Source: Basidiobolus meristosporus CBS 931.73 (Eukaryota; Fungi; Basidiobolomycota). Taken from it: a stretch of 51,612 nt of DNA. The notes beneath the pieces are model-generated. The model saw only the letters and a list, made by a program, of their open reading frames with translations. It did no database searches and was not told the origin of the DNA. Position numbers and translations under genes: made by a program. This document shows positions 977 through 51,612 of the stretch, one piece after another. Location: positions 1 to 51,612 of the forward strand of contig MCFE01000628.1 in the NCBI GenBank assembly GCA_002104905.1, read 5' to 3'. Each line of letters opens with the position of its first letter. The stretch's first letter is position 1.

Positions 977-1224
977 TGTTGTAAAAATTTATATCTCTAC
1001 CTAACTTAGTGATGTAGATCATTACCTACAAGCTCTATAGAATAGTGATCAAATTCCTTGTTGGGATTTACTCACATTATCTTCACCTAAATATTGTTGT
1101 AAAAATTTGAAATTCCACCTAAGTGTTCACATAACTTAGTCACTTAGATCATTACCCTCAAATCCTAGAGAATACTGACCAAATTCCATGTTGGGATTTA
1201 CTTGGAATATTTTCACCAAAATAC

Positions 1225-1574
1225 TGTTGTAAAAATTTGTATTTTCCACCTAAATATTCACCTAACTTAGTCACTTAGATCATCACCTTTAAATCCTAGA
1301 GAATATTGACCAAATTCCTTGTCGGGATTTACTTAGAATATTTTCACCAAAATAACAGGTACCCAGAACATGAAAATTCTCAAAGTTGTCCTAACAGCCC
1401 CAAACTTTGCACACATGTTCTTGGGACCTTCCTTAACCTATTCTACATGTTTGTAATGCCAAGACCAGGTAAAAGTATAAATACTACTTTTACATTCAAT
1501 AAATCATTAAGTGAAAACCACATAATCTACTTGTTCTCCAAGTCACTTCCAATATCTCCAAGACTCCTACAACA
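1225..1574 (+). repeat. A1 5' LTR
   Basis: TGTTGTAA...TACAACA inverted termini. TATA-like TATAAATA 1476-1483 and AATAAA 1498-1503. Confidence 0.95.
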
Positions 1575-1586
1575 GGTTATGAGCCC
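1575..1586 (+). promoter_or_regulatory. Primer-binding site complementary to the anticodon arm of initiator tRNA-Met (half-tRNA priming, Ty5/copia type)
   Basis: GGTTATGAGCCC directly abuts the LTR and is the reverse complement of GGGCUCAUAACC. Same motif at 6138, 11237 and 13134. Confidence 0.85.
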
Positions 1587-1605
1587 CGAGCTGTCACTCT
1601 CTGCA

Positions 1606-4600
1606 ATGTCTACTACTGCTATTACTGGAATTTTTCCCTCTGCTGAAAAGTTGGATGGCTCTAACTACCAAGTGGGGAAGGTGAAGATGAAGATGCTGCT
1701 GCAAGAAAGAGGCCTTTGGGATATTGTCATGGGAGAAGAATGCCCTCCTAAAAACATGGGAGAGGAAGCCTTAAAGTACCAGAACAAAGAACAAAGTGCC
1801 TTTAACTGCATTTGCCTTAATGTCATGGACAAATTGTTAATTCAATGCTCAAGAGCAAAAACGGCAAAGAATGCCTGGAAGGCATTAGAAGACACCTACC
1901 AGTCATGTTCAGCTGCCAAGAAAATGTATCTGAGAAGAAAATTCTTTACTACAAAGATGCTGCCAGGAGAAGAGATGAGAAATATAATTAACAGAATTAC
2001 CCTGCTGGTAGATGAGATGGAATCTGTGGGCGTACCAACTACTGATGAGGATGTGATAGTTACCATCCTGAATAGCCTGACAGACAAGTTTCAGGGCCTT
2101 GTTTCAGCCCTAGAGTCCAGAACTGAAGTTTTGACCTTAAATTACGTATATGGAAGGCTCCTGGATGAAGAATTAAGAAAATCAAGCGCCAATAAGAAGG
2201 AAGAAGAAAATGCTTTAATAAGCAATGATAACCAACAAAGGAGGTACCCAAGACCCTACTAAGGCAACAGCAACCTATTTTGCAACTATTGCAAAAGGAA
2301 AGGACACACATCAGACCGGTGTCTCAAAAAGAAAGATAATCAGCAAAAGAAGCCTGAATATGGAAATGCTGCAACAACTGAAGATAGACTATTCATATCT
2401 GCACTAAATATGACCACAAACAAGGATTCTCAGACGTGGTATATTGACTCTGGAGCTTCTCAACACTTTACACACCAAAAAGAACTTTTTACCCAATATC
2501 AAGAAATTCCAATTAAGAAGGTTTTCATGGGTGACAATAGAACACTTGATGCAGTGGGAGAAGGAACTATTCAAGTAAACCTTAGAAGCAGTGAAGGAAG
2601 CCATACACTGACCTTTAAAGAAGTACTCTATGTACCAGAAATAGCCAAGAACCTACTCTCTGTAAGCAAGGCCACAGCAGAAGGACTCAGTTTCAGTTTT
2701 GACAATTCTGGATGCAGGATCACTGATCAAAATGGTGCTCATATTGCTTCGGGCATCAGAGATCAGAATCTATACAAGTTGACTTATATTCCATCATATC
2801 TGGAAGCCAATATAAGTAACTTAAATGAAGAAACACCAATGCTTTGGCACAGGAGATTTGGGCACATCAATTTTGATTATTTGCGCAAAATGATCAAAGA
2901 TCAGCTAATTTCTGGAGTGAAAATTGATCCCCCAGCTAATTTGGAGCACTGTGAAGCCTGCATATATGGGAAACAAGCTAGACAACTGTTCAAGAGCTCT
3001 GGGTTAATCAAAACTAAGAAAAAATTAGATCTAATTCACTCAGATCTGTGTGGACCTATGCAAAATTTATCCTTAGGCGGGATGAAGTATCTAATCACTT
3101 TTATTGATGATTATACAAGATACACATGGGTCTACTTCATGGAGAGAAAGGAAGAAGCTCTGTCTAAGTTCAGGGAGTTTAAAGCCATGGTGGAGAGAGA
3201 AACTGGTGAAAAAATTCAAGAAAATACGCTCCAACAATGGTGGAGAATATACCTCAAAACTCTTCATCCACATCTGCAAAATTCATGGGATAAAGCAAGA
3301 GACTACTGTACCATACTCCCCACAGCAAAATGGAGTAGCAGAACAAGCTAACAGATCAATCATTGATATGGCAAGATCTATGATCCATGATCAAAAATTA
3401 TCCTATGTTTTTTGGGCGGAATCAGTTGCCACTGCTGTATATCTTAAAAATAGGAGTTATAACAGAATACTTTGTGATTCTACTCCATTTGAAGCATGGT
3501 ATGGATACAGACCAAGTGCAGAACATCTAAGAATATTTGGGTGTACAGCATATGCCAAAAAACTGGCCGGAAATCAGTCAAAATTTGAGCCAAAAAGTGT
3601 AAAATGCATATTTTTGGGCTACTACAATGAGAGTAAGGCATACAGACTCTACAATACCAAAGCAAAGAAGCTTATCAAGTCCAGGGATGTGTTGTTTGAT
3701 GAAAATTCAAAATTTTCACAAAAAATGACATCAGATGATGACAAAAATTTGATCTCAAGTCCACCAATTGCCAGGATTGAATCAGAGCAAAACAATGAAA
3801 ATTTTTTCACTCCAGAGGACTCTACAACTGTGGTTCAGCCAGAATCAGTGCCCAGGAATATCCCAGAAGTGATCATTCCAGTATCAAATGCCCGGAGATC
3901 AAATTGGACAAGAAATAGCCCAAATTACTATATTAATGAGGGTACAAACTTAGCCTATGCCTATTCAGTCCATATTGATGAACCCCAGACTGTAAAAGAG
4001 GCCCTAAATAGCCCTCAGACGGAGTTTTGGAGATCTGCAATGACTGAGGAATATCAGGCCCTGATGGAAAATCAAACTTGGGACTTAGTCAAATTACCAA
4101 TCAACCAAAAATCAATTGGATGCAGATGAGTCTTCAAGACAAAATACAAGGCTGATGGTACAATTGAAAGATACAAAGCAGGACTTGTAGCCAAAGGATA
4201 CTCTCAAACAAAAGGACTTGACTATACTGAGACCTTTGCACCGGTAGTCAAGTTTAATTCCATCAGATTAATATTGGCTATTGCAGCCAAGTATAAGTTT
4301 TTTATTCATCAAATGGATGTAAAAACTGCATTTTTGAATGGAGAACTTGATGAGGACGTATATATGGACCAGCCTGATGGGTTTATTGACCAAGATAACC
4401 CCCATTTGGTCTGCAAGCTTAAAAAGTCACTATATGGTCTCAAACAATCACCAAGAGCCTGGAATTGCAAGATAGATTCTTATTTGGAATCTTTGAGTTT
4501 CAAAAGGAGTAATGCTGACTATAGTATATACTATAAGCCAGATAGAGCAAATCCCGTTCTATTAGCTCTATAGGTGGATGATCTTATTATAGCCGCCAAT

Positions 4601-5551
4601 AACCTAGAAACATTGGAAGAGACTAAATCCAGCCTATCTAAGGAGTTCAAGATGTCTGATTTAGGAGAACTTAGTTACTACTTAGGGATTAAGTTCTCCA
4701 TAGACAGAAGTACCCAGACTATCACCCTAAGTCAATCCAAGTATATTCAAGATATACTAAAGAAGTACAAAATGGAAGACTGTAAACCGGCAGCTACCCC
4801 AATGGAGACAAACCTTAACTTGGTCAAAACTCAACCAAATCAAGAGAGCTTGGTGCCATCTGAAAGCCCTGACTTTCCTTATCAATCTGTAATTGGCAGT
4901 CTGATGTATATCATGCTTGGAACACGTCCAGATATCTCATATTCAGTGGGAGTTGTCAGCCAACATAATCAGAATTATGGATCTGATCATATTGCAGCAG
5001 TTAAGCGGAGTTTTAGATACCTAAAAGGAACTGCTGATATCTGCTTAAGATACACTTATAATGATTCAGAACAGAATCTTGTGGGATACTCTGATGCTGA
5101 TTGGGGACAAAATTTGGAAGACAGAAGATCCACCACAGGATACACCTTTCTTTACTGTAAAGGAGCAATTTCATGGAATTCAAGAAAGGAACCAACCGTA
5201 GCACTTTCTACTACAGAGGCAGAGTATATGGCAGCCTGTGAAGCTACAAAAGAAGCAATGTGGTTAAGAAAGCTGTTTACAGATTTAGGCCTATGTCAAA
5301 AAACACCTATTACTTTATTTCAAGATAATCAAGGATGTATACATTTAGGTAGAAATCCAACTTTTCATGCTAGAACCAAGCACATAGATATTAGACATCA
5401 TTTCATACGTGAAGCTATAGAGAATAACTTAGTTAGCTTAGTTTACTGTCCTACAGATGAAATGATTGCAGACATATTTACCAAACCATTAGCTAGAGAC
5501 AAGTTTGAATATTTTAGGTCAAAATTAGGACTAGTCAGTATGAACATTTAG
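1606..5551 (+). pseudogene. pol: A1 gag-pol polyprotein (Gag, CCHC knuckle, PR, IN, RT, RNase H), disrupted
   Basis: CNYCKRKGHTSDRC; WYIDSGASQH; HRRFGH..CEAC; HSDLCGP; PQQNGVAE; [12 protein letters not shown]; YSDADW; ADIFTK. Lesions: TAA 2260, +1 frameshift about 3215, TGA 4127, TAG 4571. Confidence 0.95.
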
Positions 5552-5553
5552 CT

Positions 5554-5562
5554 GAGTGGGAG
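5554..5562 (+). promoter_or_regulatory. Polypurine tract of A1
   Basis: GAGTGGGAG immediately 5' of the 3' LTR. Same in A2 and, as GAGTGGAAG, in A4. Confidence 0.8.
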
Positions 5563-5912
5563 TGTTGTAAAAATTTGTATTTTCCACCTAAATATTCACC
5601 TAACTTAGTCACTTAGATCATCACCTTTAAATCCTAGAGAATACTGACCAAATTCCTTGTTGGGATTTACTTGGAATAATTTCACCAAAATAACAGGTAC
5701 CCAGAACATGAAAATTCTCAAAGTTGTCCAAACAGCCCCAAACTTTGCACACATGTTCTTGGGACCTTCCTTAACCTATTCTACGTGTTTGTAATGCCAA
5801 GACCAGGTAAAAGTATAAATACTACTTTTACATTCAATAAATCATTAAGTGAAAACCACATAATCTACTTGTTCTCCAAATCACTTCCAATATCTCCAAG
5901 ACTCTTACAACA
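5563..5912 (+). repeat. A1 3' LTR
   Basis: Direct repeat of 1225-1574 (about 97.7%). Confidence 0.95.
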
Positions 5913-6168
5913 AATACTAGGTACCCAGTACATGAAAAATTTTCAAATTTGTTCAAACAGCCCCAAACTCTGCACACATGGTCTTGGGACTTTTCTTAAC
6001 CTATTCTACATGTTTGTAATGCCAAGACCATGTAAAAGTATAAATACTACTTTTGTATTCAATAAATCATTAAGTGAAAACCACATAATCTACTTGCTCT
6101 CCCAATCACTCCCAATATCTCCAAGATTCTTACAACAGGTTATGGGCCCCAAGCTGTCACTCTCAGCA

Positions 6169-9100
6169 ATGTCTACTACAGCTATTACTGGAGTTTTCCC
6201 TCTGCTGAAAAGTTGGATGGATCTAACTATTAAGTGTGGAAGGTGAAGATGAAGATGCTGCAACAAGAAAGAGGCCTTTGGGATATTGTCATGGGAGAAG
6301 AATGCCCTCCTAAAAACGTGGGAGAGGAAGCCTTAAAGTATCAGAAGAAAGAACAAAGTGCCTTTAACTGCACTTGCCTTAATGTTAAAGACAAATTGCT
6401 AATTCAATGCTCAAGAGCAAAAATGGCAAAGAATGCCTGGAAGGCATTGGAAGACACCTACCAGTCATGTTCAGCTGCCAAGAAAATGTATCTGAGACAA
6501 AAATTCTTTACTACAAAGATGCTGCCAGGAGAAGAAATGAAAAATATAATTAACAGAATTACCTTGCTGGTAGATGAAATGGAATTGGTGGGTGTACCAA
6601 CTACTGATGAGGATGTGATAGTTACCATCCTGAATAGCCTGACAGACAAGTTTCAGGGCCTTGTATCAGCCCTAGAGTCCAGAACTGAAGATTTGACCTT
6701 AAATTATATATATGGAAGGCTCCTGGATGAAGAATTAAGCAAATCAAGCACCAATACAAAGGAAGAAGAAAATGCTTTAATAAGCAATGAAAACCAACAA
6801 AGGAGGTACCCAAGACCCTACAAAGGCAACAGCAACCTGTTTTGAAGCTACTGCAAAAGGTAAGGACACACATCAGACCTGTGCTTCAAAAAGTAAGATA
6901 GTCAGCAGAAAAAGCCTGGATATGGAAATGCTGCAACAACTGAAGATAGATTATTCATATTGACACTAAATATGACCACAAACAAGGATTTTCAGACATG
7001 GTACATTGACTCTGGAGCATCTCAACACTTTACACACCAAAAAGACTTTTTACCCAATAGCAAGAAATTCCGATTAAGAAGGTTTTCATTGGTTGACAAT
7101 AGAACACTTGATGCAGTGGGAGAAGCAACTATCCAAGTAAACCTAAGAAGCAGTGAAGGAAGCCATACACTGACTTCCAAAGAAGTACTTTATGTACCAG
7201 AAATAGCCAAGAACCTATTATCTTTAAGCAAGGCCACTGCAGAAGGACTCAGTTTCAGCTTTGACAATTCTGGATGCAAGATCAGTGATCAAATTGGTGC
7301 CCATCTTGCTTTGGGTATAAGAGATCAGAATCTATACAAGTTGACTTATATTCCATCATATTTGGAAGCCAATATAGGTAACTTAAATGAAGAAACACCA
7401 ATGCCTTGGCACAGGAGATTTGGGCACATCAATTTTGATTATTTGCGCAAAATGATCAAAGATCAGCTAATATCTGGAGTAAAAATTAATCCCCAAGCTA
7501 ATTTGAGGCACTGTGAAGCCTGCATATATGGGAAATTAGCCAGACAACTGTTCAAGAGCTCAGGATTGATCAAAACCAAGAAAAAATAGATCTAATTCAC
7601 TCAGATCTGTGTGGACCTTAGCAAAATTTATCCTTAGGCAGGATGAAGTATTTAATCACTTTTATTGATGATTATACTAGATACACATGGGTCTACTTCA
7701 TGAAGAGAAAGGAAGTAGTTCTGTCTAAGCTCAGGGAGTTTAAAGCCATGGTGGAGAGAGAAACTGGTGAAAAAATCAAGAAAATATGCTCTGACAATGG
7801 TGGAGAATATGCCTCAAAACTCTTCATCCACATCTGCAAAATTCATGGGATAAAGCAAGAGACTACTGTACCATACTCCCCACAGCAAAATGGAGTAGCA
7901 GAACGTGCTAGCAGATCAATAATTGATATGGCAAGATCTATGATCTATGATCAAAAATTATACTATGATTTTGGGCAGAATCAGTTGCCACTGCTGTATA
8001 TCTTAAAAATGGGAGTTATAACAGAATACTTTGAGATTCTACTCCATTTGAAGCTTGGTATGTATATAGACCAAATGCAGAATATCTAAGAATATTTGGG
8101 TGTACAGCATATGCCAAGACACTGCCTGGAAATCAGTCAAATTTGAGCCAAAAATGTAAAATGCATATTTTTGGGCTACTGCAATGAGAGTAAAGCATAC
8201 AGACTCTACAATACCAAAGCAAAGAAGCTAATCAAGTCCAGGGATGTGTTGTTTTATGAAAATTCAAAATTTTCACAAAAAATGACATCAGATGATGACA
8301 AAATCTGATCTCAAATCCACCAATTGTCTGGATTAAATCAGAGCAAAACAATGAGAATCTTTTCACTCCAGAGGACTCTATAACCGTGGTTCAGCCAGAA
8401 TCAGTGCCCAGAAATATCCCAGAAGTGATCATTCCAGTATCAAATGCCCAGAGATCCAATTGGACAAGAAATAGCCCAAATTACTATATCAATGAGGGTG
8501 CAAACCTAGCCTATGCCTATTCAGTCCATATTGATGAACCCCAGACTGTAAAAGAGGCCCTAAATAGCCCTCAGACAAAGTTTTGGAGATCTGCAATGAC
8601 TGAAGAATATCAGGCCCTGATGGAAAATCAAACTTGGGACTTAGTCAAATTACCAATCAACCAAAAATCAATTGGATGCAGATGGGTCTTCAAGACAAAA
8701 TACAAGGCTGATGGTACAATTAAAAGATACAAAGCAAGACTTGTAGCCAAAGGATGCTCACAAATAAAAGGACTTGACTATACTGAGACCTTTGCACCAG
8801 TAGCTAAGTTTAATTCCATCAGATTAATATTGACTATTGCAGCCAAATATAAGTTTTTTAATCATGAAATGGATGTAAAAGCTGCATTTTTGAATGAAGA
8901 GCCTGATGAGGACATGTATATGGACCAGCCTGATGGGTTTGCCAACCAAGATAACCCTCATTTGGTCTGCAAGCTTAAAAAGTCTCTATATGGTCTCAAA
9001 CAATCACCAAGAGCCTGGAATTGCAAGATAGATTCTTATTTGGAATCTTTGAGTTTCAAAAGCAGTAATGCTGACTATAGTATATACTATAAGTCAGATA

Positions 9101-10107
9101 GAGCAAATCCAGCTCTATTAGCTCTATAGGTGGATGATATTATTATAGCCACCTATAACCTAGAAACATTGGAAGAGACTAAATCCAGCCTATCTAAGGA
9201 GTTCAAGATGTCCAATCTAGGAGAACTTAGTTACCACTTGGGGATTAAGTTCTCCATAGACAGAAGTACCCAGACTATCACCCTAAGCCAATCCAAGTAT
9301 ATTCAAGATATACTAAAGAAGTACCAAATGGAAGACTGTAAACCAGCTGCTACCCCAATGGAAACAAACCTTAACTTGGTCAAAACTCAACCAAATAAAG
9401 AGAGCTTGGTGCCATCTAAAAGCCCTGACTTTCCTTATCAATCTATGGTTTGCAGCCTGATGTATATCATGCTTGGAACATGTCCAGATATCTCATATTC
9501 AGTGGGAGTTGTCAGCCAACATAATCAGAACTACGGATCTGATCATATTGCAGCAGTTAAGCGGATTTTTAGATACCTAAAAGGAACTGCTGATATCTGC
9601 CTAACATACACTTATAAGGATTCAGAACAGGATCTTGTGGGATACTCTGATGCTGATTGGGGACAAAATTTGGACGACAGAAGATCCACCACAGGATACA
9701 CCTTTCTTTACTGTAAAGGAGCAATTTCATGGAGCTCAGGAAAGCAACCAACCGTAGCACTTTCCACCACAGAGGCAGAGTATATGGCAGCCTGTGAAGC
9801 TACAAAAAAAGCAATGTGGTTAAGAAAGCTTTTTACAGATTTAGGCCTATGTCAAAAAACACCCATCACTTTATTTCAAGATAATCAAGGATGTATACAA
9901 TTAGGTAGAAATCCAACTTTTCATGCTAGAACCAAGCACATAAATATTAGACATCATTTCATACATGAAGCTATAGAGAATAACTTAGTTAGCTTAGTTT
10001 ACTGTCCTACAGATGAAATGATTGCAGACATATTTACCAAACCATTAGCTAGAAACAAGTTTGAATATCTTAGGTCAAAATTAGGACTAGTCAGTATGAA
10101 CGTTTAG
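6169..10107 (+). pseudogene. pol: A2 gag-pol, multiple frameshifts and stops
   Basis: ORF fragments 6234-6845, 6960-7589, 7643-8089, 8386-9129, 9130-10107 are colinear with A1. Confidence 0.92.
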
Positions 10108-10697
10108 CTGAGTGGGAGTGTTATAAAAATTTGTAATTCCACCTAAATATTCACCTAGCTTAGTCACTTAGATCATTACCCTCAGATCCTAGAGAATACT
10201 GACCAAATTCCTTGTTGGGATTTACTTGGAATAATTTCACCAAAATACCAGGTACCCAGAATATGAAAAATTCTCAAAGTTGTTCAAACAGCCCCAAACT
10301 TTGCACACATGGTCTTAGGACCTTCCTTAACCTATTCTACATGCTTGTAATGCCAAGACCATGTAAAAGTATAAATACTACTTTTACATTCAATAAATCA
10401 TTAAGTGAAAACCACATAATCTACTTGTTCTCCCAATCACTTCCAATATCTCCAAAACTCTTACAACAAGTATCAGGTACCAAGAACATGAAAATTCTCA
10501 AAGGTGCTCAAACGGCCCCAAGCTTTGCACACATGTTCTTGGGGCCTTCCTAAATCTATTCTATTGGCTTATTATGCCAAGATTATACAGAAGTATAAAT
10601 ACTCCTTTTACAATCAATAATTAACTAAGTGAAAACCATATAATCTACCTGTTCTCCTAATCACTTCCAATATCTCCAAGACCATCACCTCAGTAGC

Positions 10698-12161: not shown

Positions 12162-12715
12162 TGTGGGTTATTACCATCTCTACTTGGTAGTTGAGAGAGC
12201 TTGTAGGTCAAGTCAGTACTGCTTGGCTCAGAATAGCTTCTAATAGAAGGTAGTAAGGTAATAAAGACATGTGTTCATTATGTCCAAAAAACCCTGCCAT
12301 TACAATCTTGACTCAATCAGATTTATATATCTCACTGGAAGGGACTTAGGTTATAGACAGTATGCTTTAAATAGGTGTGTGAACACCTTTATGTTATGGT
12401 AAGTGTCTCAACTGTTGTTAAGATTTGTAATTCCACCTAAATAGTCACCTACCTTAGTCAGCTCATTACCTTCAAATCCTGGGGAGTACTGACCAAATTC
12501 CTTGTTGGGATTTACTTGAAGTATTTTCACCATAATACCAGGTACCCAGAACATGAAAATTCTCAAAGTTGTCCAAACAGCCCCAAGCTTTGCACACATG
12601 TTCTCAGGACCTTGCTTAGCCTATTCTATGTCTTTATTATGCCAAGTACATGTAAAAGTATAAGTACTTCTTCTACATTCAATAGATCACTGAGTGAAAG
12701 CCATGTAGTCTACTT

Positions 12716-13085
12716 TGTGGGATATTACTGACTGTACTTGGTAAGTGGGATAGCTTGTAGGTCAAGTCAGTATCACTTGGTTCAGAATAGCTTCCAATAG
12801 AAGGTAGCAAGGTAATAAAGACTTGTGTTTATTCCATCTAAATCCCCTTCACTTGGTTCAATTGGGTACATATATATATCACTTGGGGGTGCGTAGATAA
12901 TAGACAATGTGTTATAAAATAGGGGTGTGAACACCTTCCTGTTATGGTAAGTGCTCTAACTAGATAAGGGCAGGGATAGGAGGGAGGGCATGTAGTGGAA
13001 CCATAGGGAGGATACTGGGGGACTTTGGGTAGGACTCTGGGGAGAACTCTTGGGCAAAGAGTGGGTAAGGCATTTAGTACTCACA
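12716..13085 (-). repeat. Solo LTR of Ty3 family B inside the A4 5' LTR
   Basis: TGTGGG...ACTCACA is the reverse complement of the B1 LTR. Perfect TSD TACTT (12711-12715 / 13086-13090). Confidence 0.9.
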
Positions 13086-13164
13086 TACTTGTCCTCCCAG
13101 ATCACTTCCAATATCTCCAAGACTCTTATAACAGGTTATGAGCCCCAAGCTGTGACTATCTGCA

Positions 13165-14249
13165 ATGTCTACTACTACTATTACTGGAATTTTTCCCTCT
13201 GCTGTAAAGTTGGATGGATCTAACTACCAAGTGTGGAAGGTTGAGATAAAGATGCTGCAACAAGAAAGAGGCCTTTGAGATATTGTCATGGGAGAGGAAT
13301 ACCCTCCTAAAAACATGGGAGAGGAAGACTTAAGGCACCAGAAGGAAGAACAAAGTGGCTTTAACTGCATTTGCCTTAATGTTGAAGACAAATTGCAAAT
13401 TCAATGTTCAAAAGCAAAAACGGCAAAGAATGCCTGGAAGGCATTAGAAGACACCTACCAGTCATGTTCAGCTGCTAAGAAACGTTATCTTAGACAAAAA
13501 GTCTTTGCTATAAAGATGCTGCAAGGAGATGAAATGAAAATTCTAATTAACAGAATTACCCTGCTAATGGATGAGATTGAATCTGTGGGCATTCCAGCCA
13601 TGGATGAGGATATGAGAATAACCATCCTGAGTTGCCTGACAGACAAGTTTCAGGGCCTTATATCAGCCCTAGAGTCCAGAACTGAACATTTGACCTTAAA
13701 TTGCATATAAGGAAGGCCCCTGGATGAGGAATTAAGAAAATCAGGCACCAATAAGAAGGAAGAAGAAAGTGCTCTAATAGGCAGTAATAACCAACAAAGA
13801 AGGTATCCATATCCTTACAAAGGCAACAGCAACCTGTTTTGCAACTACTGCAAAAGAAAAGGACTCACATCAGACTGGTGTCTCAAAAAGAGTGATAATC
13901 AGCAAAGATGACTAAATATGGAAATATTGCAACAACTGAAGACAGTCTATTCATATCTGCACTATATTTGCCCACAAACAGAGATTCTTAGATGTGGTAC
14001 ATTGAATTTGGAGCATCTCAACACTCTACAAACCAAAAAGTACTTTTACCCAATACCAAGAAGTTCCAATCAAGAAGATTTCATAGGTAACAATAGAACA
14101 CTTGATGCAGTGGGAGACAGAATTATCCAAGTAAACCTTAGAAGCAGTGAAGGGAGCCATACACTCACCTTTAAAGAAGTACTCTATGTACCAGAAATAG
14201 CCAAGAACCTGCTCTCTGTAAGGAAGGCTACAGCAGAAGGACTCAGCTT
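13165..14249 (+). pseudogene. gag: A4 gag-protease remnant
   Basis: ORFs 13288-13710 and 13918-14265 match A1 Gag and PR (AKNAWKALEDTYQSC; EVLYVPEIAKNLLS). Confidence 0.85.
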
Positions 14250-17200: not shown

Positions 17201-20081
17201 CAAGATCTTGTGGCCCAGGAACAACAATAGTGTATACAGGAAATGGCACTTTTTGGGATGAAGTTTGAATTGGCTCTTGAGGAGGGCTCTCAGGATATGT
17301 TGCACATTGTGTATATGTTCTTCTACATTGGGGAAATATATGGTGATGTCATCCAGATACACAAGAGCACATCCCATTGTAAATTTTCTAGCACCTTATT
17401 GATCATTCTTTGGAAAGTAGCAGGAGCATTGTAGAAGCCAAAGGGTAGTTAATTCCATTTGTATAATCCAAACAATGTTATATAAGCAGCTTTGGGTTGA
17501 TCTTCCAGGGCTACTTCTACTTGCCAATACCTGGAAATTAAGTCAAGAGAGCTAAAATATTTATCTCCAATTAATCTGTCCAAGAGCTTGTTTATCTGCA
17601 GTAGTGAATACACATCCTTTCAGGTGATGGCATTCAATTTTTGGTAGTTGATGCAAAAATGTTGCTTTCTATCTTTCTTTGGGACTATCACTACAGGGGA
17701 GGCCCAAGGAGACTGGCTCTCTGTATTGATGTTTTCATTTAATAGTGTTTTGATTGTCTCTTTGATATAGTTTGTGTCAATTTTTGAGTTCCTATAGGCT
17801 TTTTGCTTGATGGGATATTTGTCAGTAAGGTGGATTTGGTGATATACCCCAGGTATATGACCAATTACTTGGTTCTTAGAGAATACTCAGGCAAGCAGGT
17901 GTATTCCTTCTAAGAGCTTTTCTTGTAATATAGGTGGCAGACTGGGGTCCACATCTAGTTCAGGGAGTTCTTCTTCTGGTTCCTTATTTTAGGTGGTCCT
18001 TGGTTGTTTCTGACAACTTCCTCTAGGTTTAACAATGGCACTCCTCTTGGCAATGTCACCATGTGTTGCCTGTTGTTAACCACTAAGCACTACAGACTTT
18101 GGGTTTCAAATTTTGGTGGTATCCATACTTTAGGGATCAAGATTCCTTCCAGTTGTATGGATGCTTTTGTTGTGGCTATCATTCTTCTGCTTCTCAAATA
18201 AGCTATTGGTGTCTTTAATGGGATCACTGTCTCACTGGAGGGTGGTATTTTTATCACCTTTTATGTGATGATTGGAGACTGCAACAGTTTCACCTCTTTG
18301 ATTGTCACACTGTTGCAACATACCTTGCTCTCATTGGTGATATGAATCAGTAGGATACTCTTGGTATCCCACCTGAGTTCAGATGCACTGTAGAGTATGA
18401 CCATCTTATGTTGGATAAACCAACTCTTGCCAATGAGTAAGTCATTGGCTGAGACAAGTAGAACCTCAACATGTTGGTGTTTAATCAAGTTGCCTAGCCA
18501 GATGGGGAAATTAGGCACCACTCCTACTGTTGTGTCCAGCTGGTCATTTGCTAGCTGTACCCAAATGGTGTTGTTGGGGACTAAATCTAACTTGAGATGT
18601 TTTGCTAATGACTCTGACATGATCAATGTAGAGGATCCTGCGTAAATAAGGGCAGGAATCTCCATATTCTCTATACGTATCTTTACATATGTACCTTTAT
18701 TTGGTTTTTGTAGGACCATCTGGTTGACATGAAGGGTTGTTATCTCCTTCATTCCCTCTATCAGTTCCTTGACTAGAGCTTGGCCAAGTCCCAGTAAATT
18801 GGTTGTTGGGAAGGTTGCCTTGGTTTGCTCTAGTGCCTTCATTACGGGGAATAAGCTGTGGGAAGATGTACAAGTGTTCTTTGTTTGCTTCAACACCTCT
18901 TCCCAAGGCTCATTCTATACCTCTTCACCAAGTTCTGCGTACTTTCCTTTTGACAGAACCTCTACTCCAGGTTCCTTTGCCTCCTCTCTAGAAGCATCAT
19001 GTTAACGCTTCTTCTTCCGCACTTCAACTGTTCTGACCAGAGGGCTTAGATTGACTGAGTCCTGTTGGCCTCCTGGCAAGGGACTCTGTCTTTTGATGCC
19101 TTCTCTTTTGTGTCCGGAGCAGGTTCTTGTCCATACCGTTTTTTACATTTGTAGGCTCAGTGGCCTAATTCTTCACATACATAACACAGGTACTGTTGTT
19201 GCGGTTGTTCCATCCGTTGGGTCAGGGCTTGCACCAGGGCCTCTAGATCTACAACAGCTTCCCAGAGTTTATCACCTTCTTTGAGGACTTCTTGGACATT
19301 GTTGATTGAGAGTTCTTGGACCTTTTGCCATAATTCCTCTAACTCATGGTCTTGTGGGGAGGCAATTTTTTCTTTCTTATAGGGGATCCCTGTCCTTCAA
19401 CTCAACTGTTGTAAAGATTTGTAATCCCACCTAAATAGTCACCTAACTTAGTCAGCTCATTACCTTCAAATCCTGGGGAGTACTGACCAAATTCCTTGTT
19501 GAGATTTACTTGAAGTATTTTCACCATAATACCAGGTACCCAGAAAATGAAAATTCTCAAAGTTGTCCAAACAGCCCCAAGCTTTGCACACATGTTCTCA
19601 GGACCTTGCTTAGCCTATTCTATGTCTTTGTTATGCCAAGTACATGTAAAAGTATAAGTACTTCTTCTACATTTAATAGATCACTGAGTGAAAGCCATGT
19701 AGTCTACTTTGTGGGATATTACTGACTGTACTTGGTGAGTAGGAGAGCTTGTAGGTCAAGTAGTACCACTTGGTTCAAAATAGCTTCTGAAAGAAGGTAG
19801 CAAGGTAATAAAGACTTGTGTTTATTCAGTCCAAATCTCTTTGTTCCCTCACTTGGTTCAATTGGATATATATATCACTTGGGGGGACTTAGATAATAGA
19901 CAATGTGTTTGAAAATAGAGGTGTGAACACCTTCCTGTTATGGTAAGTGCTCTAACTAGATAAGGGCAGGAATTGGAGGGAGGATGCGTGGGGGAATCAT
20001 AGGGAGTATACTGCGGGACTTTGGGTAGGACTCTGGGGGGAACTTTTGGGCAAAGAGTGGGTACTACATTTAGTACTCACA
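14250..20081 (-). mobile_element. Ty3 element B2, degenerate. 5' LTR 19710-20081, 3' LTR truncated to 14250-14304, PBS and gag 5' part replaced by foreign DNA
   Basis: TSD AGCTT (14245-14249) / AGCTC (20082-20086) in A4 pol. ORF3, IN, RH, RT, PR and gag C-terminal remnants colinear with B1 (ORFs 14514-14801, 16266-17021, 16979-17377, 18261-18896). Confidence 0.88.
19401..19736 (+). repeat. Recent duplicate of 12407-12742 (A4 LTR segment with both of its junctions)
   Basis: About 7 differences in about 303 nt. Includes the flanking CTCAAC, a private 4-nt deletion and the TACTT/B-LTR junction. Confidence 0.9.
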
Positions 20082-22455
20082 AGCTCCAGCTTTGATAATT
20101 CTGGATGCAGGATCACTGAGCAAAATGGTGCCCATATTGATTTGGGTATCAGTGATCAGAATCTATAAAAGTTGGTTTATATTCCAGCATACTTGGGAGC
20201 CAATATAAGTACCTTATATGAAGAAGCACCAATGCTTTGGCACAGGAGATTTGGGCATATCAATTTTGATCATTTGCGCAGAATGACCTAGGATCAGCTA
20301 ATTTCCAGAGTAAAAATTGCTCCCCCAGCTAAGTAGAAGCACAGTTAAGCTTGCATATATGGGAAACAAGCCAGACAACTGTTAAAGAGCTCTGGGTGGA
20401 TCAAAACTAAGAAAAAATTAGATCTAATTCACTCAGAACTGTTTACCTATACAAAATTTATCCTTAGGCAGGAGGAAGTATCAAATCACGTTTATTAATG
20501 ATTATTCAAGATACACATGAGTCTACTTCATGGAGAGAAAGGAAGAAGCTTTTTCTAGGCTCAGGGAGCTTAAAGCCATGGTGGAGTGAGACACTGGTGA
20601 AAAAATTCAAGAAAATATGCTCTGGTAATGGTGGAGAATATAACTCAAAACTCTTAATCCACTTCTGCAAGATTCATGGGATAAAGCAAGAGACTACTGT
20701 ACCATACTCCCCACAGCAAAATGGAGTAGCAGAATGTGCAAACAAATCAATCATTGACATGGCAAGATCTATGATCTATGATCAAAAATTATCTTATGAT
20801 TTTTGGGTGGAATCAGTTGCCACAGCTGTATATCTTAAAAATAGGAGTTATAACAGAATACTTTGTGATTCTACTCCATTTGAAGCATGGAATGGATACA
20901 GACCAAGTGCAGAACATCTAACAATAATTGGGTGCACAGCATATGCTAAGAAACTGTCTGGAAATAAGTCAAAATTTGAGCCAAAAAGTGTTAAATGCAT
21001 ATTTTTGGGCTACTGAAATGGGAGTAAAGCATACAGACTCTACAATACCAAAGCAAAGAAGCTAATCAAGACCAGGATGTGTTGTGCGGTGAAAATTCAT
21101 TACTTTCACAAAGAATGACATCAGATGATGACAACAATCCGATCTCAAGTCCACCAATTGTCAGAATTGAATCAGAGCAAAACAAAGAAATTTTTTCACT
21201 TCAGGGGACTTTCCAACTGTGGTTTATTGTGAATCAGCGCCCAGGAATATCTCAGAAGTGATCATTCCAGTATGAAATGCCTGGAGATCCAACTGGACAA
21301 GAAATAGCCTAAATTACTACATCAATGCAGGTACAAACTTAGCCTATGCCTATTCAGTCCATACTGATGAGCCCCAGATTGTAAAAGAGGCCCTAAATAG
21401 TCCTCAGACAGAGTTTTGGAGATCTTCAATGACTGAGGAATATCAGGCTCTGATGCAAAACCAAACTTGGGACTTAGTCAACTTACCAATTAACCAATGA
21501 TCAATTGGATGCAGATGGGTCTTTGAGACAACATATAAGGCTGATGGTACACTTGAAAGATACAAAGTAAGACTTGTGGCCAAAGAATACTCTCAAACAA
21601 AAGAACTTGACTATATTGAGACCTTTGCACCAGTAGCCAAGTTTAGTTGCGTCAGATTGACATTGGCCATTACAGCCAAATATAAGTTTTTTTAATTATC
21701 ACATGGATGTAAAAACTGCATTTTTGAATAGAGAACTTGATGAGGACTTGTATATGGACAAGCCTGATGGGTTTGTTGACCAGGATAACCCCCATTAGGT
21801 CTGCAAGCTTAAAAAATCTCTATATTGCCTCATGCATTGACCAAGTGCCTGGAATTGCAAGATAGATTCTTATTTTGAATCTTTGAGTTTCAAGAGGAGC
21901 AATGCTAAAATGAGCATATACTTTAAGCCAGACTGAGCAAATCCAGCTCTTCTAACACTATAGGTGGATGATCTTATTATAGCCACCAATAACCTAGAAA
22001 CATTGGAAGAGACTAAATCCAGCCTATCTAAAAAGCTCAGGATGTCTAATCTAGGAGAACTCAGTTACCACTTAGGGATTTAGCTCTTAAAGTAACCAAC
22101 TGTAGCACTTTCTACCACAGAGGCAAAGTATATGGCAGCCAGTGAAGCTATAAAAGAAGCTATGTGGCTAAGAAAGCTTTTTACTGATTCAGGCCTATGT
22201 CAAAAAATGCCTACCATTTTATCTCAAGAAAATCAAGGATATATACAAATAGGCAAAAATCCAACTTTTCATGCTAGAACCAAGCACATAGATATCAGAT
22301 ATCATTTCATATGTGAAGCTATAGAGAATAGCTTGGTTAGCTTAGTTTACTGTCCTTTAGATGAAATGATTGCTGACATATTTACCAAACCATTATCTAG
22401 AGACAAGTTTGAATATCATTGGTCAAAATTAGGACTAGTCAGTTTGAGTATTTAG
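20082..22455 (+). pseudogene. pol: A4 IN-RT-RNase H remnant with an about 490-nt internal deletion near 22085
   Basis: ORFs 20498-21016 and 22132-22455 match A1. Sequence jumps from CTTAGGGATT to AACCAACTGTAGCAC. Confidence 0.85.
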
Positions 22456-22647
22456 CTGAGTGGAAGTGTTTTAAAAATTTGTAATTCCACCTAAATAATC
22501 ACCTAGCTTAGTCACTTATATCATTACCTTCAAATCCTAGGCAATACTGACCAAATTCCTTGTTGGGATTTACTCAGAATATATACCCAGAACATGAAAA
22601 TTAATAAGTTGTTCAAACAGCCCCAAAATTTGCACAAATGTTCTTGG

Positions 22648-23037
22648 TATGAGTACTCAATGTAGTACCCACTCTTTGCCCAAGAGTTCTCCCAAGAGTT
22701 CCCTCCAGAGTCCTACCCAAAGTCCTCCAGTACCCTCCCTATGATTCCCCCACACGTCCTCCCCTCCTATCCCTGCCCTTATCTAGTAAGAACACTTACC
22801 ATAACAGGAAGGTGTTCACACCCCTATTTTATAACACATTGTCTATTGTCTAAGCCCCCCCCCCAAGTGATATATATATCTACCCAATTGAACCAGGAAG
22901 AACAACGAGATTTGGACAAAATAAACAGAAGTCTTTATTACCTTGCTACCTTCTTTCGGAAGCTATTCTGAACCAAGTGGTACTGACTTGACCTACAAGC
23001 TCTCCCACTCACCAAGTACAGTCAGTAATAACCCACA
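22648..23037 (+). repeat. B1 5' LTR (390 bp)
   Basis: TA/TGTGAG...CCCACA. Direct repeat of 29038-29425. Contains an ATATATAT TATA-like run. Confidence 0.95.
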
Positions 23038-23041
23038 TATT

Positions 23042-23055
23042 TGGTGCTGTCTCTG
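23042..23055 (+). promoter_or_regulatory. Putative primer-binding site of B1
   Basis: TGGTGCTGTCTCTG starts 4 nt after the LTR; TGG is complementary to tRNA CCA. Cognate tRNA not identified. Confidence 0.55.
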
Positions 23056-23078
23056 CGGAAATAAGCACAAGAGAGGTA

Positions 23079-23951
23079 ATGACTACTACAATCAAACTAA
23101 AAACATACAAGGGAAAGAGAGAGAAAGCCCTTGAGTGGTTCGATAAGTTTGAGAGAGTTGCGGTTGATGCAGGATGGGACGACGATAAGAAAGTAAGAGA
23201 GTTCGCAAGACATATGGAAGGGTCAGCATGGCGATGGCATTATGGGTTGGAAGACGCAGTCAAAGACAACTGGGATGCACTAGAAGAAGCCTACAAGACA
23301 CGCTTTCTATATGCCAAAGGATACCACTACGAAGCCCTTCTACTGTCCTTGCGGAAGAAAAGCAGTGAAAGCTATGAAGCCTACACTGAACTGTTTCTCC
23401 AACAAGTTCGATGTCTCCCGAAGGACGAAATCGCCAAACGACAGCTCATGAGGTATTACATCATGGGCTTAGATGACAAAATAAGACGTAGGGCGTCCAA
23501 AGAACAACAGGGATGTAAAACGTTGCAAGAGTTGGTCAAACAAGTACAAGGGGTCATCTTGCTATGGGGGCTACCCTATAGTGATACGAATGATTGAAGG
23601 ACAGGGATCCCCTGTAAGAAAGGAAAAATTGCCTCCCCAAAAGACCGTGAGTTAGAGGAATTACGGCGAAAGGTCCAAGAACTCTTGATCAACAATGTCC
23701 AAGAAGTCCCCAAAGAAGGTGATAAACTCTGGGAAGCTGTCGTAGATCTAAAGGCCCAGGTTCAAGTCCTGACCCAACAGATGGAACGACCGCGACAACA
23801 GTATCCGTGTTATGTGTGTGGAGAAGTAGGTCACCGGGCCCATGAATGTGAAAAACGGTACGGAAGAGAAGCCGTACCGGACACAAAAGAGAAGAAGGCG
23901 TCAAAAGACAGAGTCCCTTGCCAGGAGGCCAACGGGACTCAGTCAATCTAA
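23079..23951 (+). CDS. gag: B1 Gag with CCHC zinc knuckle, one in-frame TGA at 23595
   Basis: ORFs 23079-23597 and 23685-23951 share a frame with no other stop. Retrotransposon Gag pattern (WFDKFERVA...W...K...F) and CYVCGEVGHRAHEC. Confidence 0.85.
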
Positions 23952-26900: not shown

Positions 26901-27694
26901 TAATTGCTACCGATTATTTCTCAAAGTGGGTAGAAGCCCAAGCCGTCCGCAATAAAGATCAGAAGACAACCGCCTGATTCATTCTAGAACACCTCATCTG
27001 CCGACACGGATATCCTCAGATACTCCTGTCCAACAATGGTGGTTCCTTCCTGAACAACACTGTGGCCCACCTGTGCAAAATGATGGGCGTGAAACAAGTC
27101 TTCACGGCCGCGTATCACCCCCAGACTAACGGATTAACCAAGAGGATGAACCAGACGTGTTGCTGCATACTGGAGAAGCTTCACTGGGAACTTCCCCAAT
27201 CATGGGCCGAGCTGCTCCCACTGACACTCCTAGCAATGCGCACCACACCGAATAAAACGACGGGTTTCTCCCCATATGAAATCCTATATGGACAAAGACC
27301 CAAGTGGCGGGAGGAAGCTGGATTGACGATGGAAGGTGTCCCCCTGACGACACATAACGACTATATAGAAAGGTTGATACACCGTATTGCCCACCTATAC
27401 ATAAAAGTATTCGAAAATGTTGACAAGCACCTTCCCCCTCCACCCAAAAATGAGAAACTAACGAGACAAAAGTGGAAACCAGGCGATAAGGTGTGGTACG
27501 ACCAAACCATTGCAGGCCTCAAGTTCCGCCCACAATTTACACCCCAATGGATTGGCCCATGCACCGTTATCAGTTTGGACCACGGACCAAAGTACACCAT
27601 CACCCTGAATAATAAGACAATCAGCAACGTAGCGCCAGCCCATCTGAAACCGTTTCATGATGATCCACCAATCATCACTGAGACCAAAGTGTGA
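23918..27694 (+). CDS. pol: B1 Pol (PR, RT, RNase H, IN with GPY/F module), -1 frame relative to gag, one in-frame TGA at 26975
   Basis: ALIDTGS; PWASPIVIV; YLDD; CDGS...IGAVL; H...H...C..C; GIDFVGP; WIGP. The pol frame is open from 23852. Confidence 0.95.
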
Positions 27695-27823
27695 TTAAAC
27701 AATTATCAGGACAAGGATAGAGGAAGACACGGGATACATTCAAAGTTTATTAGAGGAGATTTTAGTCGATATAGGTACAAATAATATGCGCGAGGGAGTT
27801 TGCCCAAAGGGGAGAACAAAAGA

Positions 27824-28993: not shown

Positions 28994-29037
28994 TCAAAGA
29001 ACTTCAAGGACGAAGCTCCCACTTAACCCCCGGGATA

Positions 29038-29425
29038 TGTGAGTACTCAATGTAGTACCCACTCTTTGCCCAAGAGTTCTCCCAAGAGTTCCCTCCAGAG
29101 TCCTACCCAAAGTCCTCCAGTACCCTCCCTATGATTCCCCCACGCGTCCTCCCCTCCTATCCCTGCCCTTATCTAGTTAGAACACTTACCATAACAGGAA
29201 GGTGTTCACACCCCTATTTTATAACACATTGTCTATTGTCTAAGCCCCCCCCAAGTGATATATATATCTTCCCAATTGAACCAGGAAGAACAACGAGATT
29301 TGGACGAAATAAACAGAAGTCTTTATTACCTTGCTACCTTCTATTGGAAGCTATTCTGAACCAAGTGGTACTGACTTGACCTACAAGCTCTCCCACTCAC
29401 CAAGTACAGTCAGTAATAACCCACA
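29038..29425 (+). repeat. B1 3' LTR (388 bp)
   Basis: TGTGAG...CCCACA. About 8 differences from the 5' LTR, including C-run length. Confidence 0.95.
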
Positions 29426-49968: not shown

Positions 49969-50337
49969 TGTTGCAATTTAAGAAGTGATTTGGATATAAG
50001 GAACTTATCAAGAAATAGTGATAATAGTTGAACTGTTGTTTATTCATAAAGAAGCTCAGTATTTATACCTTTGTAGAAGTAATACAGCTGCAACACTAAG
50101 TAGGGAGGGTTTCTCAATATTCAGGAGCATTCTGTAACAGTTTCAGGGTTAGTACATAATGTTTGGTAATAGTGCTAATTTGATCCTGACTATAAGGGAA
50201 TAATCATAAGATCATATATCTGGAGAAAGTGGCGAAGTTAAGGCAGTAAATGAGTCCTACAGTGACTAAGACTAGCCTAGAATTGTTAAGTAAATTTTTA
50301 GCTGCTGAATGATACCAAATAGTCCAATATTTCAACA
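49969..50337 (-). repeat. 3' LTR of copia family F (369 bp)
   Basis: TGTTG...CAACA termini. PPT GAGGGGGAG on the minus strand at 50338-50346. Confidence 0.88.
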
Positions 50338-51612
50338 CTCCCCCTCAACTAAATAATTTCTTAATCCCAATTTCTCTCTAAGGATCTCAAACTGTGGCCT
50401 AACTAGTGGTTTTGTCAATATGTCTGCCACCATTTTGTCAGTTGGGCAGTAAACCAGCTCTACTAAGTTATTTTCTACAGCTTCCCTCACAAAGTGATGC
50501 TGTATATCAATGTGCTTAGTTCTGGCATGATTAGTAGGATTTCTAGCTAATGAAATACAACTTTGATTATCCTTGTAAATACATGTTGGTTCACCTGAAT
50601 TAAAACCTAAGTCTTTGAATAATTTTCGTAGCCATATAGCCTCCTTAGTTGCTTGACATGCAGCCATATATACGGCTTCAGTTGTAGATAGTGCCACAGT
50701 TGGTTGTTTCTTGCAATTCCAAGTAATAGCTGCACCAGCATAAAGAAATACATAGCCTATGGTAGAGCATCTGTCAATCAAATCCCTACCCCAATCTGAA
50801 TCACTATAACCATCAAATTTTTGCCTATTAGCTGCTCCAGAGTATTCCAGAACCATATATATGGTACCTTGTAGATATCTGAAAATCCGCTTAACTGCTG
50901 CAATTTGATCTGATCCATAATTCTGCATGAATTGACTGACTATTCCAACTGCTACTGCAATATCTGGACGTGTAGACACCATCAAGTACATTAGGCTACC
51001 GACCATTGATTGATAGGGAAAGTTTTGGTCCATATTTGAGCCGTTTTCATCTATAACTGGCTGAGATTTGCTTAATTTCAGGTTATTGTCCATAGGGGTT
51101 GCTGCAGGTTTGCAATTTTCCATTTTGAAGCGTCTAAGAATGTCCCTGATGTACTTAGACTGATTCAGCACAATTTTCTGCGTAGGTATGTTAAATTTGA
51201 CCTCAATTCCAAGAAAATAGCTCAATTTTCCAAGATCTTTCATCTCAAACTTGCTGAAGAGATCTGATTTCGTCTGTTTAAGTGCCTCTTGATCACTTGT
51301 AGCTATAATTAGGTCGTCCACATAAAGAACTAGGATGATCACACCCTTTTTGAGCTGTTTCACATATATACTGTGATCTGCAGTGCTACAAGAGAACCCA
51401 ATTTCCTCTAGATATGTGTCAATCTTGTTATACCATGCTCTGGGTGCCTGCTTAAGCCCATACAACAATTTTCTAAGTTTGCACACCTTATGGGGGCTTT
51501 TTGGATCGGTAAAACCTTCTGGTTGCTCCATATATATAGTTTCTTGCAAATCCCCATTTAGAAAGGCTGTTTTGACGTCCATTTGGTGTAGATCTAGACT
51601 GTGTACAGCTGC
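50332..51612 (-). CDS. pol: Copia family F RT-RNase H, open through the window edge (partial pol)
   Basis: [12 protein letters not shown]; LYGLKQAPRAW; LYVDD (Tyr = TAT); YSDSDW; ADILTK. No stop over more than 416 codons. Confidence 0.95.
   Translation of the reverse strand, partial: AAVHSLDLHQMDVKTAFLNGDLQETIYMEQPEGFTDPKSPHKVCKLRKLLYGLKQAPRAWYNKIDTYLEEIGFSCSTADHSIYVKQLKKGVIILVLYVDDLIIATSDQEALKQTKSDLFSKFEMKDLGKLSYFLGIEVKFNIPTQKIVLNQSKYIRDILRRFKMENCKPAATPMDNNLKLSKSQPVIDENGSNMDQNFPYQSMVGSLMYLMVSTRPDIAVAVGIVSQFMQNYGSDQIAAVKRIFRYLQGTIYMVLEYSGAANRQKFDGYSDSDWGRDLIDRCSTIGYVFLYAGAAITWNCKKQPTVALSTTEAVYMAACQATKEAIWLRKLFKDLGFNSGEPTCIYKDNQSCISLARNPTNHARTKHIDIQHHFVREAVENNLVELVYCPTDKMVADILTKPLVRPQFEILREKLGLRNYLVEGEC

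What the first reader, a model, noticed from the sequence alone, without database searches (positions are those of the whole stretch)
4571..4573. All three A copies have TAG exactly at the Tyr of the RT YVDD motif
Seen: CTA TAG GTG GAT GAT in A1 (4571), A2 (9127) and A4 (21961). These copies differ by several to over 10 percent and inserted at different times. Family F has TAT here. A T/C to G transversion is not the C-to-T decay seen elsewhere, so the stop was almost certainly in the source element(s). Two explanations: (a) a non-autonomous lineage mobilised in trans for a long time; (b) programmed leaky termination. Established: tRNA-Tyr is a natural UAG suppressor (TMV), and UAG followed by G and a purine-rich run is a known read-through context. 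Inference: read-through here would restore the YxDD Tyr and could titrate RT against Gag-PR-IN.
Basis: partly seen in the sequence, partly recalled or inferred. Interest (0 to 1): 0.85.

Follow-up and report, generated by a model that had tools for sequence, protein, structure and literature searches.

The report
Shared stop codon in copia RT
Three separately inserted copies of one copia-type jumping gene all carry the same TAG stop in place of the essential tyrosine of reverse transcriptase, so the stop was inherited from their source elements; most likely these copies borrow the enzyme from working relatives, but leaky reading of the stop is not excluded.

Summary
CTATAGGTGGATGAT occurs exactly three times (4568, 9124, 21958). 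The TAG sits at the Tyr of the RT YVDD motif: Pfam RVT_2 position 167. The closest outside relative and in-window family F both have TAT there.

The three copies are independent insertions: each has LTRs, two have 5-bp target duplications, and LTR pair divergence is 2.3%, 7.1% and 16.1%. Of 27 internal in-frame stops, 26 are private to one copy; only this TAG is shared. Three independent T>G hits have a probability of about 7e-8, and local gene conversion is excluded. So the TAG was in the source elements over a long period.

Mechanism is unresolved. I favour trans-mobilised RT-null elements (0.6):
- A1 and A3/A4 also share a 1-nt frameshift in the integrase core, carried by about 75% of read depth, so the family evidently transposes with borrowed proteins.
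- The 3' context (GUG GAU) fits no known read-through motif.
- No significant RNA structure follows the stop.

However, the sources stayed otherwise intact, with 0 disabling hits downstream against about 6 expected. A simple decaying dead lineage is therefore rejected. Either recombination with intact elements or genuine Tyr-inserting read-through (about 0.17) is needed. The genome-wide TAG/TAY ratio could not be obtained.

The parts
1225..5912 (+). Copy A1, the youngest Ty1/copia element. LTRs 1225-1574 and 5563-5912 (8/350 differences); TSD AATAC at 1220-1224 and 5913-5917; gag ATG at 1606.
   Evidence: Pfam order gag, PR beta-barrel, integrase, RVT_2
4571..4573 (+). TAG at the Tyr position of YVDD in A1
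9127..9129 (+). The same TAG in copy A2
21961..21963 (+). The same TAG in copy A3/A4
5913..10471 (+). Copy A2 (main part). The first 130 nt of its 5' LTR lie at 1095-1224, cut off by the insertion of A1. LTR pair 25/350 differences; TSD AATAT / AGTAT.
12411..14249 (+). 5' half of copy A3/A4 (LTR, gag, start of PR), ending at the A1-equivalent of 2693
20087..22647 (+). 3' half of copy A3/A4 (from the A1-equivalent of 2694 to the first 180 nt of the 3' LTR; the rest of that LTR is at 29426-29581). It has a 486-nt deletion in RT-RH. LTR pair 53/330 differences.
4574..5551 (+). A1 open frame after the TAG, 325 codons: the rest of RT plus RNase H, with all conserved residues kept, ending in a second shared TAG at 5549
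9130..10107 (+). A2 open frame after the TAG, 325 codons, 92% identical to that of A1
3215..3215 (+). Extra T (GAAAAAATTC against GAAAAAATC in A2) that shifts the frame inside the integrase core just before SDNGGEY. It is shared by A1 and A3/A4 (20606) and absent from A2 (between 7775 and 7776).
   Evidence: about 25% of contig depth lacks it in two runs
50332..51612 (-). Family F copia RT-RNase H: an open frame of 426 codons running off the window, with TAT at the YVDD Tyr (codon starts at 51324); 67% nucleotide identity to A

Best explanation
The TAG is an inherited allele of the source elements of copia family A. It is not decay that happened after insertion. As encoded, these elements cannot make an active reverse transcriptase. 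They are copied because their cis-acting parts (LTR ends, primer-binding site, polypurine tract, packaging signal) are intact, and RT (and, for the frameshifted type, integrase) is supplied in trans by coding-competent elements of the same or a compatible family. The rest of the reading frame stays intact because defect-bearing and intact RNAs are co-packaged and recombine, or because the partial products are still selected. This matches what has been described for non-autonomous Athila elements whose ORFs remain under purifying selection. Shown here: shared origin of the TAG, independent insertions of different ages, a second shared defect, and the lack of a read-through context. Inferred: trans-complementation, recombination with intact elements, and the existence of TAY-bearing helpers.
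For: Evidence that the TAG came from the sources:
- Three of three copies have it, with identical 15-mers.
- 26 other internal stops are private and none is shared by two copies.
- Three independent T>G changes at one site have a chance of about 7e-8.
- TSDs and LTR pairs show three separate retrotransposition events; LTR pair divergence is 2.3%, 7.1% and 16.1%.

Evidence for trans-mobilisation:
- A1 and A3/A4 share a 1-nt insertion that breaks integrase in its catalytic core.
- About 75% of contig depth in two DNA runs carries that insertion. The family, with 113,701 contigs laid, has therefore amplified mostly as protein-defective copies, which needs trans-complementation anyway.

Evidence against a read-through signal:
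- No stimulatory motif follows the stop (GUG GAU against CA(A/G)N(U/C/G)A; PMC4150775).
- Folding after the UAG is not better than shuffles.
- The codons after the TAG are almost the same as in the TAT-bearing relative L001, so the context was not remodelled.

Precedent: non-autonomous LTR elements that keep intact ORFs under purifying selection are described for Athila (PMC2410132).
Against: - No TAY-bearing copy of family A was seen. All three in the window have TAG, and the read table did not show position 4573.
- The sources at the three insertion times were almost identical. Private branch lengths of 2.06%, 3.6% and 8.6% roughly equal half the LTR divergence.
- The sources were otherwise intact. 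In a neutrally drifting clonal lineage about 25 disabling hits are expected over the ORF and about 6 downstream of the TAG between the oldest and youngest insertion. None was seen (P about 1e-11 and 0.002).
- The A1 lineage shows purifying selection: 28 synonymous to 19 non-synonymous private changes, against 29:71 expected.
- These points are natural under read-through. Under this explanation they need frequent recombination with intact elements.
Confidence: 0.6

Rival explanations
1. Functional stop-codon read-through, programmed or merely leaky. A fraction of ribosomes decode UAG with near-cognate tRNA-Tyr, which restores YVDD exactly. RT-RNase H is then made at a low ratio to Gag-PR-IN in an element that otherwise has a single gag-pol frame. 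The TAG lineage would be autonomous or semi-autonomous.
For: - The TAG is present at three insertion times spanning about 7% neutral divergence per lineage.
- The 325-codon frame after the TAG is open in A1 and A2, with all conserved RT and RNase H residues.
- No further disabling change accumulated in the sources, against about 6 expected downstream (P = 0.002).
- A1-A2 omega downstream is 0.59, similar to 0.36-0.66 upstream.
- In yeast, Tyr makes up 92% of the residues inserted at UAG (PMC4150775).
- A2's source had no other defect.
Against: - The 3' context is not a known leaky one, and unprogrammed read-through in yeast is below 0.3% (PMC4150775).
- No significant downstream structure was found. 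Pseudoknots could not be tested.
- Two of the three sources carried a frameshift 1.35 kb upstream, so the TAG would not be reached in frame.
- dN/dS downstream has no power: 3:4 and 4:6 private changes, pairwise p = 0.07.
- A Tyr codon is one of the commonest one-step routes to a stop, so the position is less of a coincidence than it looks.
Confidence: 0.17
2. The stop is removed or recoded at the RNA level. One route is splicing that uses the GT right after TAG (TAG|GTGGAT). The other is A-to-I editing of UAG to UGG, as known in some filamentous ascomycetes (from my own knowledge).
For: AG|GT is present at the site. There is no other evidence.
Against: - GTGGAT is a poor donor.
- Any intron starting here would delete the catalytic VDD.
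- Editing would give Trp, not Tyr, in the motif.
- No RNA run was listed, so neither route could be tested.
Confidence: 0.03
3. The shared TAG spread between neighbouring copies by gene conversion after insertion, or arose repeatedly at a mutational hotspot. It would then say nothing about the source elements.
For: The copies lie within 20 kb of each other, and A1 sits inside A2.
Against: - A1 and A2 differ at 4557 and 4583, and A3/A4 differs at several sites within 15 nt upstream of the TAG, so a conversion tract would have to be under 30 nt.
- T>G is the rarest change.
- No other stop is shared.
Confidence: 0.03

Closest known systems
Non-autonomous Athila (Ty3-type) elements of Arabidopsis with intact ORFs under purifying selection (PMC2410132)
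   Same: Elements that cannot transpose on their own yet amplify and keep conserved reading frames. Recombination among lineages is invoked to explain this.
   Different: Athila cases lack whole genes or domains. Here the element is full length and is disabled by a single nonsense codon at the RT catalytic Tyr (plus a 1-nt frameshift in many copies). The superfamily (copia) and the host also differ.
BARE-2 / BARE-1 of barley (own knowledge; cited in papers listed)
   Same: A copia-type sublineage with one small inherited coding defect that is mobilised by its autonomous sister and reaches high copy number.
   Different: BARE-2 loses Gag expression, not RT. The autonomous partner is known there and has not been found here.
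Gag-pol stop-codon read-through of retroelements (MuLV UAG-G plus pseudoknot, own knowledge; Candida Tca2 UGA plus putative pseudoknot, PMC2194720, abstract seen)
   Same: An in-frame stop upstream of RT that would set a low RT-to-Gag ratio; UAG followed by G as in MuLV.
   Different: Those stops lie between gag and pol, not inside a catalytic motif, and depend on a defined downstream structure. None was detected here, and the stop replaces an essential residue.
Near-cognate decoding of UAG by tRNA-Tyr in yeast (PMC4150775)
   Same: Gives the residue that would restore YVDD without a scar.
   Different: Measured in favourable CA(A/G)N(U/C/G)A contexts, in a [PSI+] upf1 strain. The context here is different and the host is a distant fungus.

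Membership tests
Ty1/copia LTR retrotransposon | Domain order gag, protease, integrase, RT (RVT_2), RNase H | tested here: met
   Pfam Retrotran_gag_2, Pol_BBD, gag_pre-integrs, rve, SH3_retrovirus and RVT_2, in that order. RNase H motifs aligned.
Ty1/copia LTR retrotransposon | Direct LTRs ending TG...CA and a 5-bp target-site duplication | tested here: met
   350-nt LTRs TGTTG...ACAACA. TSD AATAC for A1 and AATAT/AGTAT for A2.
Non-autonomous LTR element mobilised in trans | The same coding defect in independent insertions (defect older than the insertions) | tested here: met
   TAG in three of three copies and the extra T at 3215 in two of three; all other stops are private.
Non-autonomous LTR element mobilised in trans | An autonomous partner with matching LTR ends and primer-binding site exists in the same genome | not testable with these tools
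   No TAY copy of family A is in the window. Family F has TAT but is only 67% identical, and its LTRs are outside the window. The read table hid position 4573. The protein database holds nothing above 72% identity.
Non-autonomous LTR element mobilised in trans | Relaxed selection on the disabled coding region | tested here: not met
   The sources stayed intact: 0 disabling hits against about 6 expected downstream of the TAG (P = 0.002). Omega is about 0.6 downstream. This is compatible only with a recombining or still-selected non-autonomous lineage, as in Athila.
Programmed stop-codon read-through | Stimulatory sequence right after the stop (CA(A/G)N(U/C/G)A, CAR-YYA or UGA-CUA types) | tested here: not met
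   The sequence after the UAG is GUG GAU GAU. Motif taken from PMC4150775.
Programmed stop-codon read-through | Stable conserved RNA structure a few nucleotides downstream | tested here: inconclusive
   Minimum-energy folds of 80-130 nt give z -0.5 to -1.6 in all three copies. Pseudoknots are not covered by the tool.
Programmed stop-codon read-through | The stop is fixed in all active copies and the downstream frame is under purifying selection | tested here: inconclusive
   Three of three copies have it in the window; the genome-wide state is unknown. The downstream frame is intact in A1 and A2, but substitution counts are too small.
Programmed stop-codon read-through | The upstream frame is continuous, so that ribosomes reach the stop in frame | tested here: not met
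   The sources of A1 and A3/A4 have the +1 nt frameshift at 3215. Only the A2 type is continuous.

The most novel reading that the evidence does not exclude
Family A is an autonomous copia lineage that has lived for a long time with UAG in place of the catalytic Tyr codon of RT. Near-cognate tRNA-Tyr reads it at a low rate and restores YVDD exactly. One nonsense codon inside the enzyme would then do the job that gag-pol frameshifting or read-through does in other retroelements, namely keeping RT scarce relative to Gag-PR-IN.
Probability: 0.15. Interest if true: 0.85.

Novelty: new member of a known kind. Interest (0 to 1): 0.45.

Why it matters
If the ordinary reading holds, this is a clean, datable example of a very abundant retrotransposon family in an early-diverging fungus. 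The organism is Basidiobolus meristosporus according to earlier notes, which I did not check. Most members are protein-defective 'cheaters' that nevertheless keep intact reading frames. That bears on how trans-complementation and recombination shape families of mobile elements. If the read-through reading holds, it would be the first retroelement known to me that regulates RT dosage by a stop codon placed on a catalytic residue. It would also be a natural reporter for Tyr-inserting UAG suppression. A simple k-mer count in existing reads can separate the two readings.

Tried and rejected
Searches that led nowhere:
- RNA runs: none was listed, so expression, splicing and editing could not be examined.
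- DNA reads: one read-laying run on 1600-5560. It showed the family is hugely abundant and gave the 3215 indel share. I draw no inference from its absence.
- Protein database: a search with the 325-aa downstream piece found nothing above 72% identity, so the host's own copies are not in that collection.
- Metagenome scan: a pattern with N at the third codon position gave 0 hits.
- Earlier findings, searched by sequence and by words: nothing on this TAG.

Ideas considered and rejected:
- UAG reassigned in this genome. The same family ends its ORF with TAG, stop usage of other ORFs in the window is ordinary, and the window holds no suppressor tRNA.
- DNA-level tandem duplication of A1/A2. Rejected by the TSDs and complete LTRs.
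- Gene conversion. Rejected by flanking differences.
- TARE1 of tomato as a precedent. It is autonomous and not comparable.

Substitutions were counted column by column only.

Full report
OBSERVATION

The 15-mer CTATAGGTGGATGAT occurs at 4568, 9124 and 21958 without mismatch. It occurs nowhere else even with two mismatches allowed (0.19 expected).

In A1 the frame reads ...NPVLLAL*VDDLIIA. Pfam RVT_2 covers the upstream piece to profile position 166 and resumes at 169 at the second residue after the stop, so the TAG takes the place of the YVDD tyrosine.

The closest protein in the public collection is P0001, 72% identical, from an ENA metagenome contig. It reads ...SPVLLALYVDDLIIA, with codon TAT. 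Family F at the right end of the window (minus strand) also has TAT.

ANATOMY

- **A1 (1225-5912)** has 350-nt LTRs (TGTTG...ACAACA) and the target duplication AATAC. It sits inside the 5' LTR of A2.
- **A2** is made of 1095-1224 plus 5913-10471, with duplication AATAT/AGTAT. A2 in turn sits at the same LTR position of an older remnant.
- **A3 and A4** are the two halves of one element. They are collinear at A1 position 2693/2694 and separated by Ty3-related DNA.

There are therefore three independent retrotransposition events, not DNA duplications.

| Copy | LTR pair differences | LTR divergence | Private changes in 3488 shared internal columns |
|---|---|---|---|
| A1 | 8/350 | 2.3% | 72 (2.06%) |
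| A2 | 25/350 | 7.1% | 126 (3.6%) |
| A3/A4 | 53/330 | 16.1% | 300 (8.6%) |

(LTR values; private changes.) The private branch lengths are close to half the LTR divergence of each copy.

WAS THE STOP IN THE SOURCE?

Yes.
- Of 27 internal in-frame stops in the three copies, 26 are private (2, 7 and 17). None is shared by two copies, and only the TAG at 4571 is shared by all three.
- T>G is the rarest class of change, 16 of 498. The chance of three independent T>G changes at one given T is about 7e-8.
- Copies differ within 15 nt on either side of the TAG, so a conversion tract would have to be under 30 nt.

A SECOND SHARED DEFECT

A1 and A3/A4 share an extra T: GAAAAAATTC, against GAAAAAATC in A2.
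- This shifts the frame inside the integrase core just before SDNGGEY.
- In two DNA runs that hold the family (113,701 and 90,612 contigs laid), about a quarter of the depth at 3215 lacks this T. About three quarters therefore carries the frameshift.
- All eight of A2's 1-nt deletions lie next to homopolymers. Another of them is the same A6TT to A6T change, at 3025. A2's in-frame state may therefore even be a private accident.

Either way, most of this very abundant family descends from sources that could not make integrase, RT or RNase H in one frame. The family must be transposing with proteins supplied in trans.

TESTS OF READ-THROUGH

- **Context.** GUG GAU follows the UAG. This does not fit the yeast motif CA(A/G)N(U/C/G)A. 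Unprogrammed read-through in yeast is below 0.3% (PMC4150775). The G at +4 is forced by the valine codon. The following codons are nearly the same as in the TAT-bearing relative L001.
- **Structure.** Folds of 80-130 nt after the UAG give z-scores of -0.5 to -1.6 in the three copies. Pseudoknots cannot be tested with the tool.
- **Selection.** Pairwise A1-A2 omega is 0.59 after the TAG (16 synonymous, 25 non-synonymous, p = 0.07) and 0.36-0.66 before it. Private changes after the TAG are 3:4 (A1) and 4:6 (A2), which gives no power.
- **RNA.** No RNA run was listed.

WHAT DOES NOT FIT A SIMPLE DEAD LINEAGE

- The sources at the three insertion times were almost the same sequence.
- A1 has evolved more slowly than A2 since their split: 72 against 126 private changes, p = 1.5e-4.
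- A1's private changes are biased towards synonymous: 28:19, against 29:71 expected under its own mutation spectrum.
- I took the disabling rate from A2 and A3/A4 (0.094 per substitution). A neutrally drifting clonal lineage would then have collected about 25 disabling changes in the ORF, and about 6 after the TAG, between the oldest and the youngest insertion. None is seen (P about 1e-11 and 0.002). With the time gap halved the values are 2e-6 and 0.04.
- The 325-codon frame after the TAG is open in A1 and A2 and keeps the conserved RT and RNase H residues.

The TAG-bearing sources were therefore kept intact. This could be by selection on their own translation, which implies read-through. It could also be by continual recombination with intact elements, or by selection on partial products. 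Non-autonomous Athila elements with ORFs under purifying selection are a published precedent for the latter (PMC2410132).

VERDICT

I rank the explanations as follows.

| Explanation | Confidence |
|---|---|
| Inherited RT-null allele in elements mobilised in trans, with recombination keeping the frame intact | 0.6 |
| Functional Tyr-inserting read-through | about 0.17 |
| RNA-level removal of the stop | 0.03 |
| Gene conversion or mutational hotspot | 0.03 |
| Unassigned | remainder |

Three things weigh for the first: the shared integrase frameshift proves trans-complementation in this family, there is no read-through signal, and there is published precedent. Two things weigh against it: I found no TAY copy of the family, and the TAG persisted through three sampled time points.

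The decisive figure is the share of TAG against TAT/TAC among young intact copies in the genome.

The host is Basidiobolus meristosporus according to earlier follow-up notes of this scan. I did not verify this.

Noticed in passing
window 3209-3217 (A1), 20600-20608 (A3/A4), 7770-7777 (A2): A 1-nt T insertion after an A6 run breaks the integrase core in A1 and A3/A4 but not in A2. About 75% of read depth carries it. On GAA-AAA-ATT-C a +1 slip of the tRNA on AAA would re-pair perfectly and restore the frame, so recoding is conceivable but untested.
   Followed up: partly
window 999-1354, 5563-6137, 10119-10682: A1 is inserted in the LTR of A2, and A2 in the LTR of an older copy. Both insertions are at the same LTR position (126-130), with 5-bp duplications AATAC and AATAT/AGTAT.
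   Followed up: yes
window 6138-10118 (A2 internal): All 7 private stops and all 8 one-nt deletions of A2 lie before about 8303. The last 45% (integrase C-terminus, RT, RNase H) has none, although it has a similar substitution density. The end-gap probability is about 5e-4, but the comparison was chosen after seeing the data. Unexplained.
   Followed up: partly
window 5549-5575 (and 10105, 22453): The terminal stop of the pol frame is also TAG in all three copies. It is followed in frame by LSGSV, which resembles the C-terminal QSGSVG tail of relatives P0002 and P0010. That stretch is also the polypurine tract plus LTR start, so the conservation may be at the DNA level.
   Followed up: no
window 22650-29425: A young Ty3-type element (LTRs 97.9% identical) whose long frame is interrupted only by in-frame TGA codons at 26975 and 27692, and later at 28559 and 28655. 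None has the UGA-CUA context that other notes report for LINEs of this genome.
   Followed up: no
window 12407-13085 and 19401-20081: A 680-nt composite (the first 308 nt of a family A LTR joined to an inverted Ty3 LTR) occurs twice at 92% identity. One copy lies on each side of the Ty3 internal region that splits A3/A4. This is a rearrangement that simple nesting does not explain.
   Followed up: no
window 13131-14249 and 20087-22466 (A3/A4): The private changes of the oldest copy are unusually rich in transversions: A>T 39, T>A 20, and only 59% transitions against 67-74% in A1 and A2. Several of its stops need two changes in one codon.
   Followed up: no
window 1600-5560: The family is extremely abundant in the DNA runs of the same organism: over 110,000 Logan contigs at 80% identity or more. 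It is also present in more diverged form in a run coded organism C, which its listing nevertheless marks as having the same species label as X1 (4,209 contigs).
   Followed up: partly
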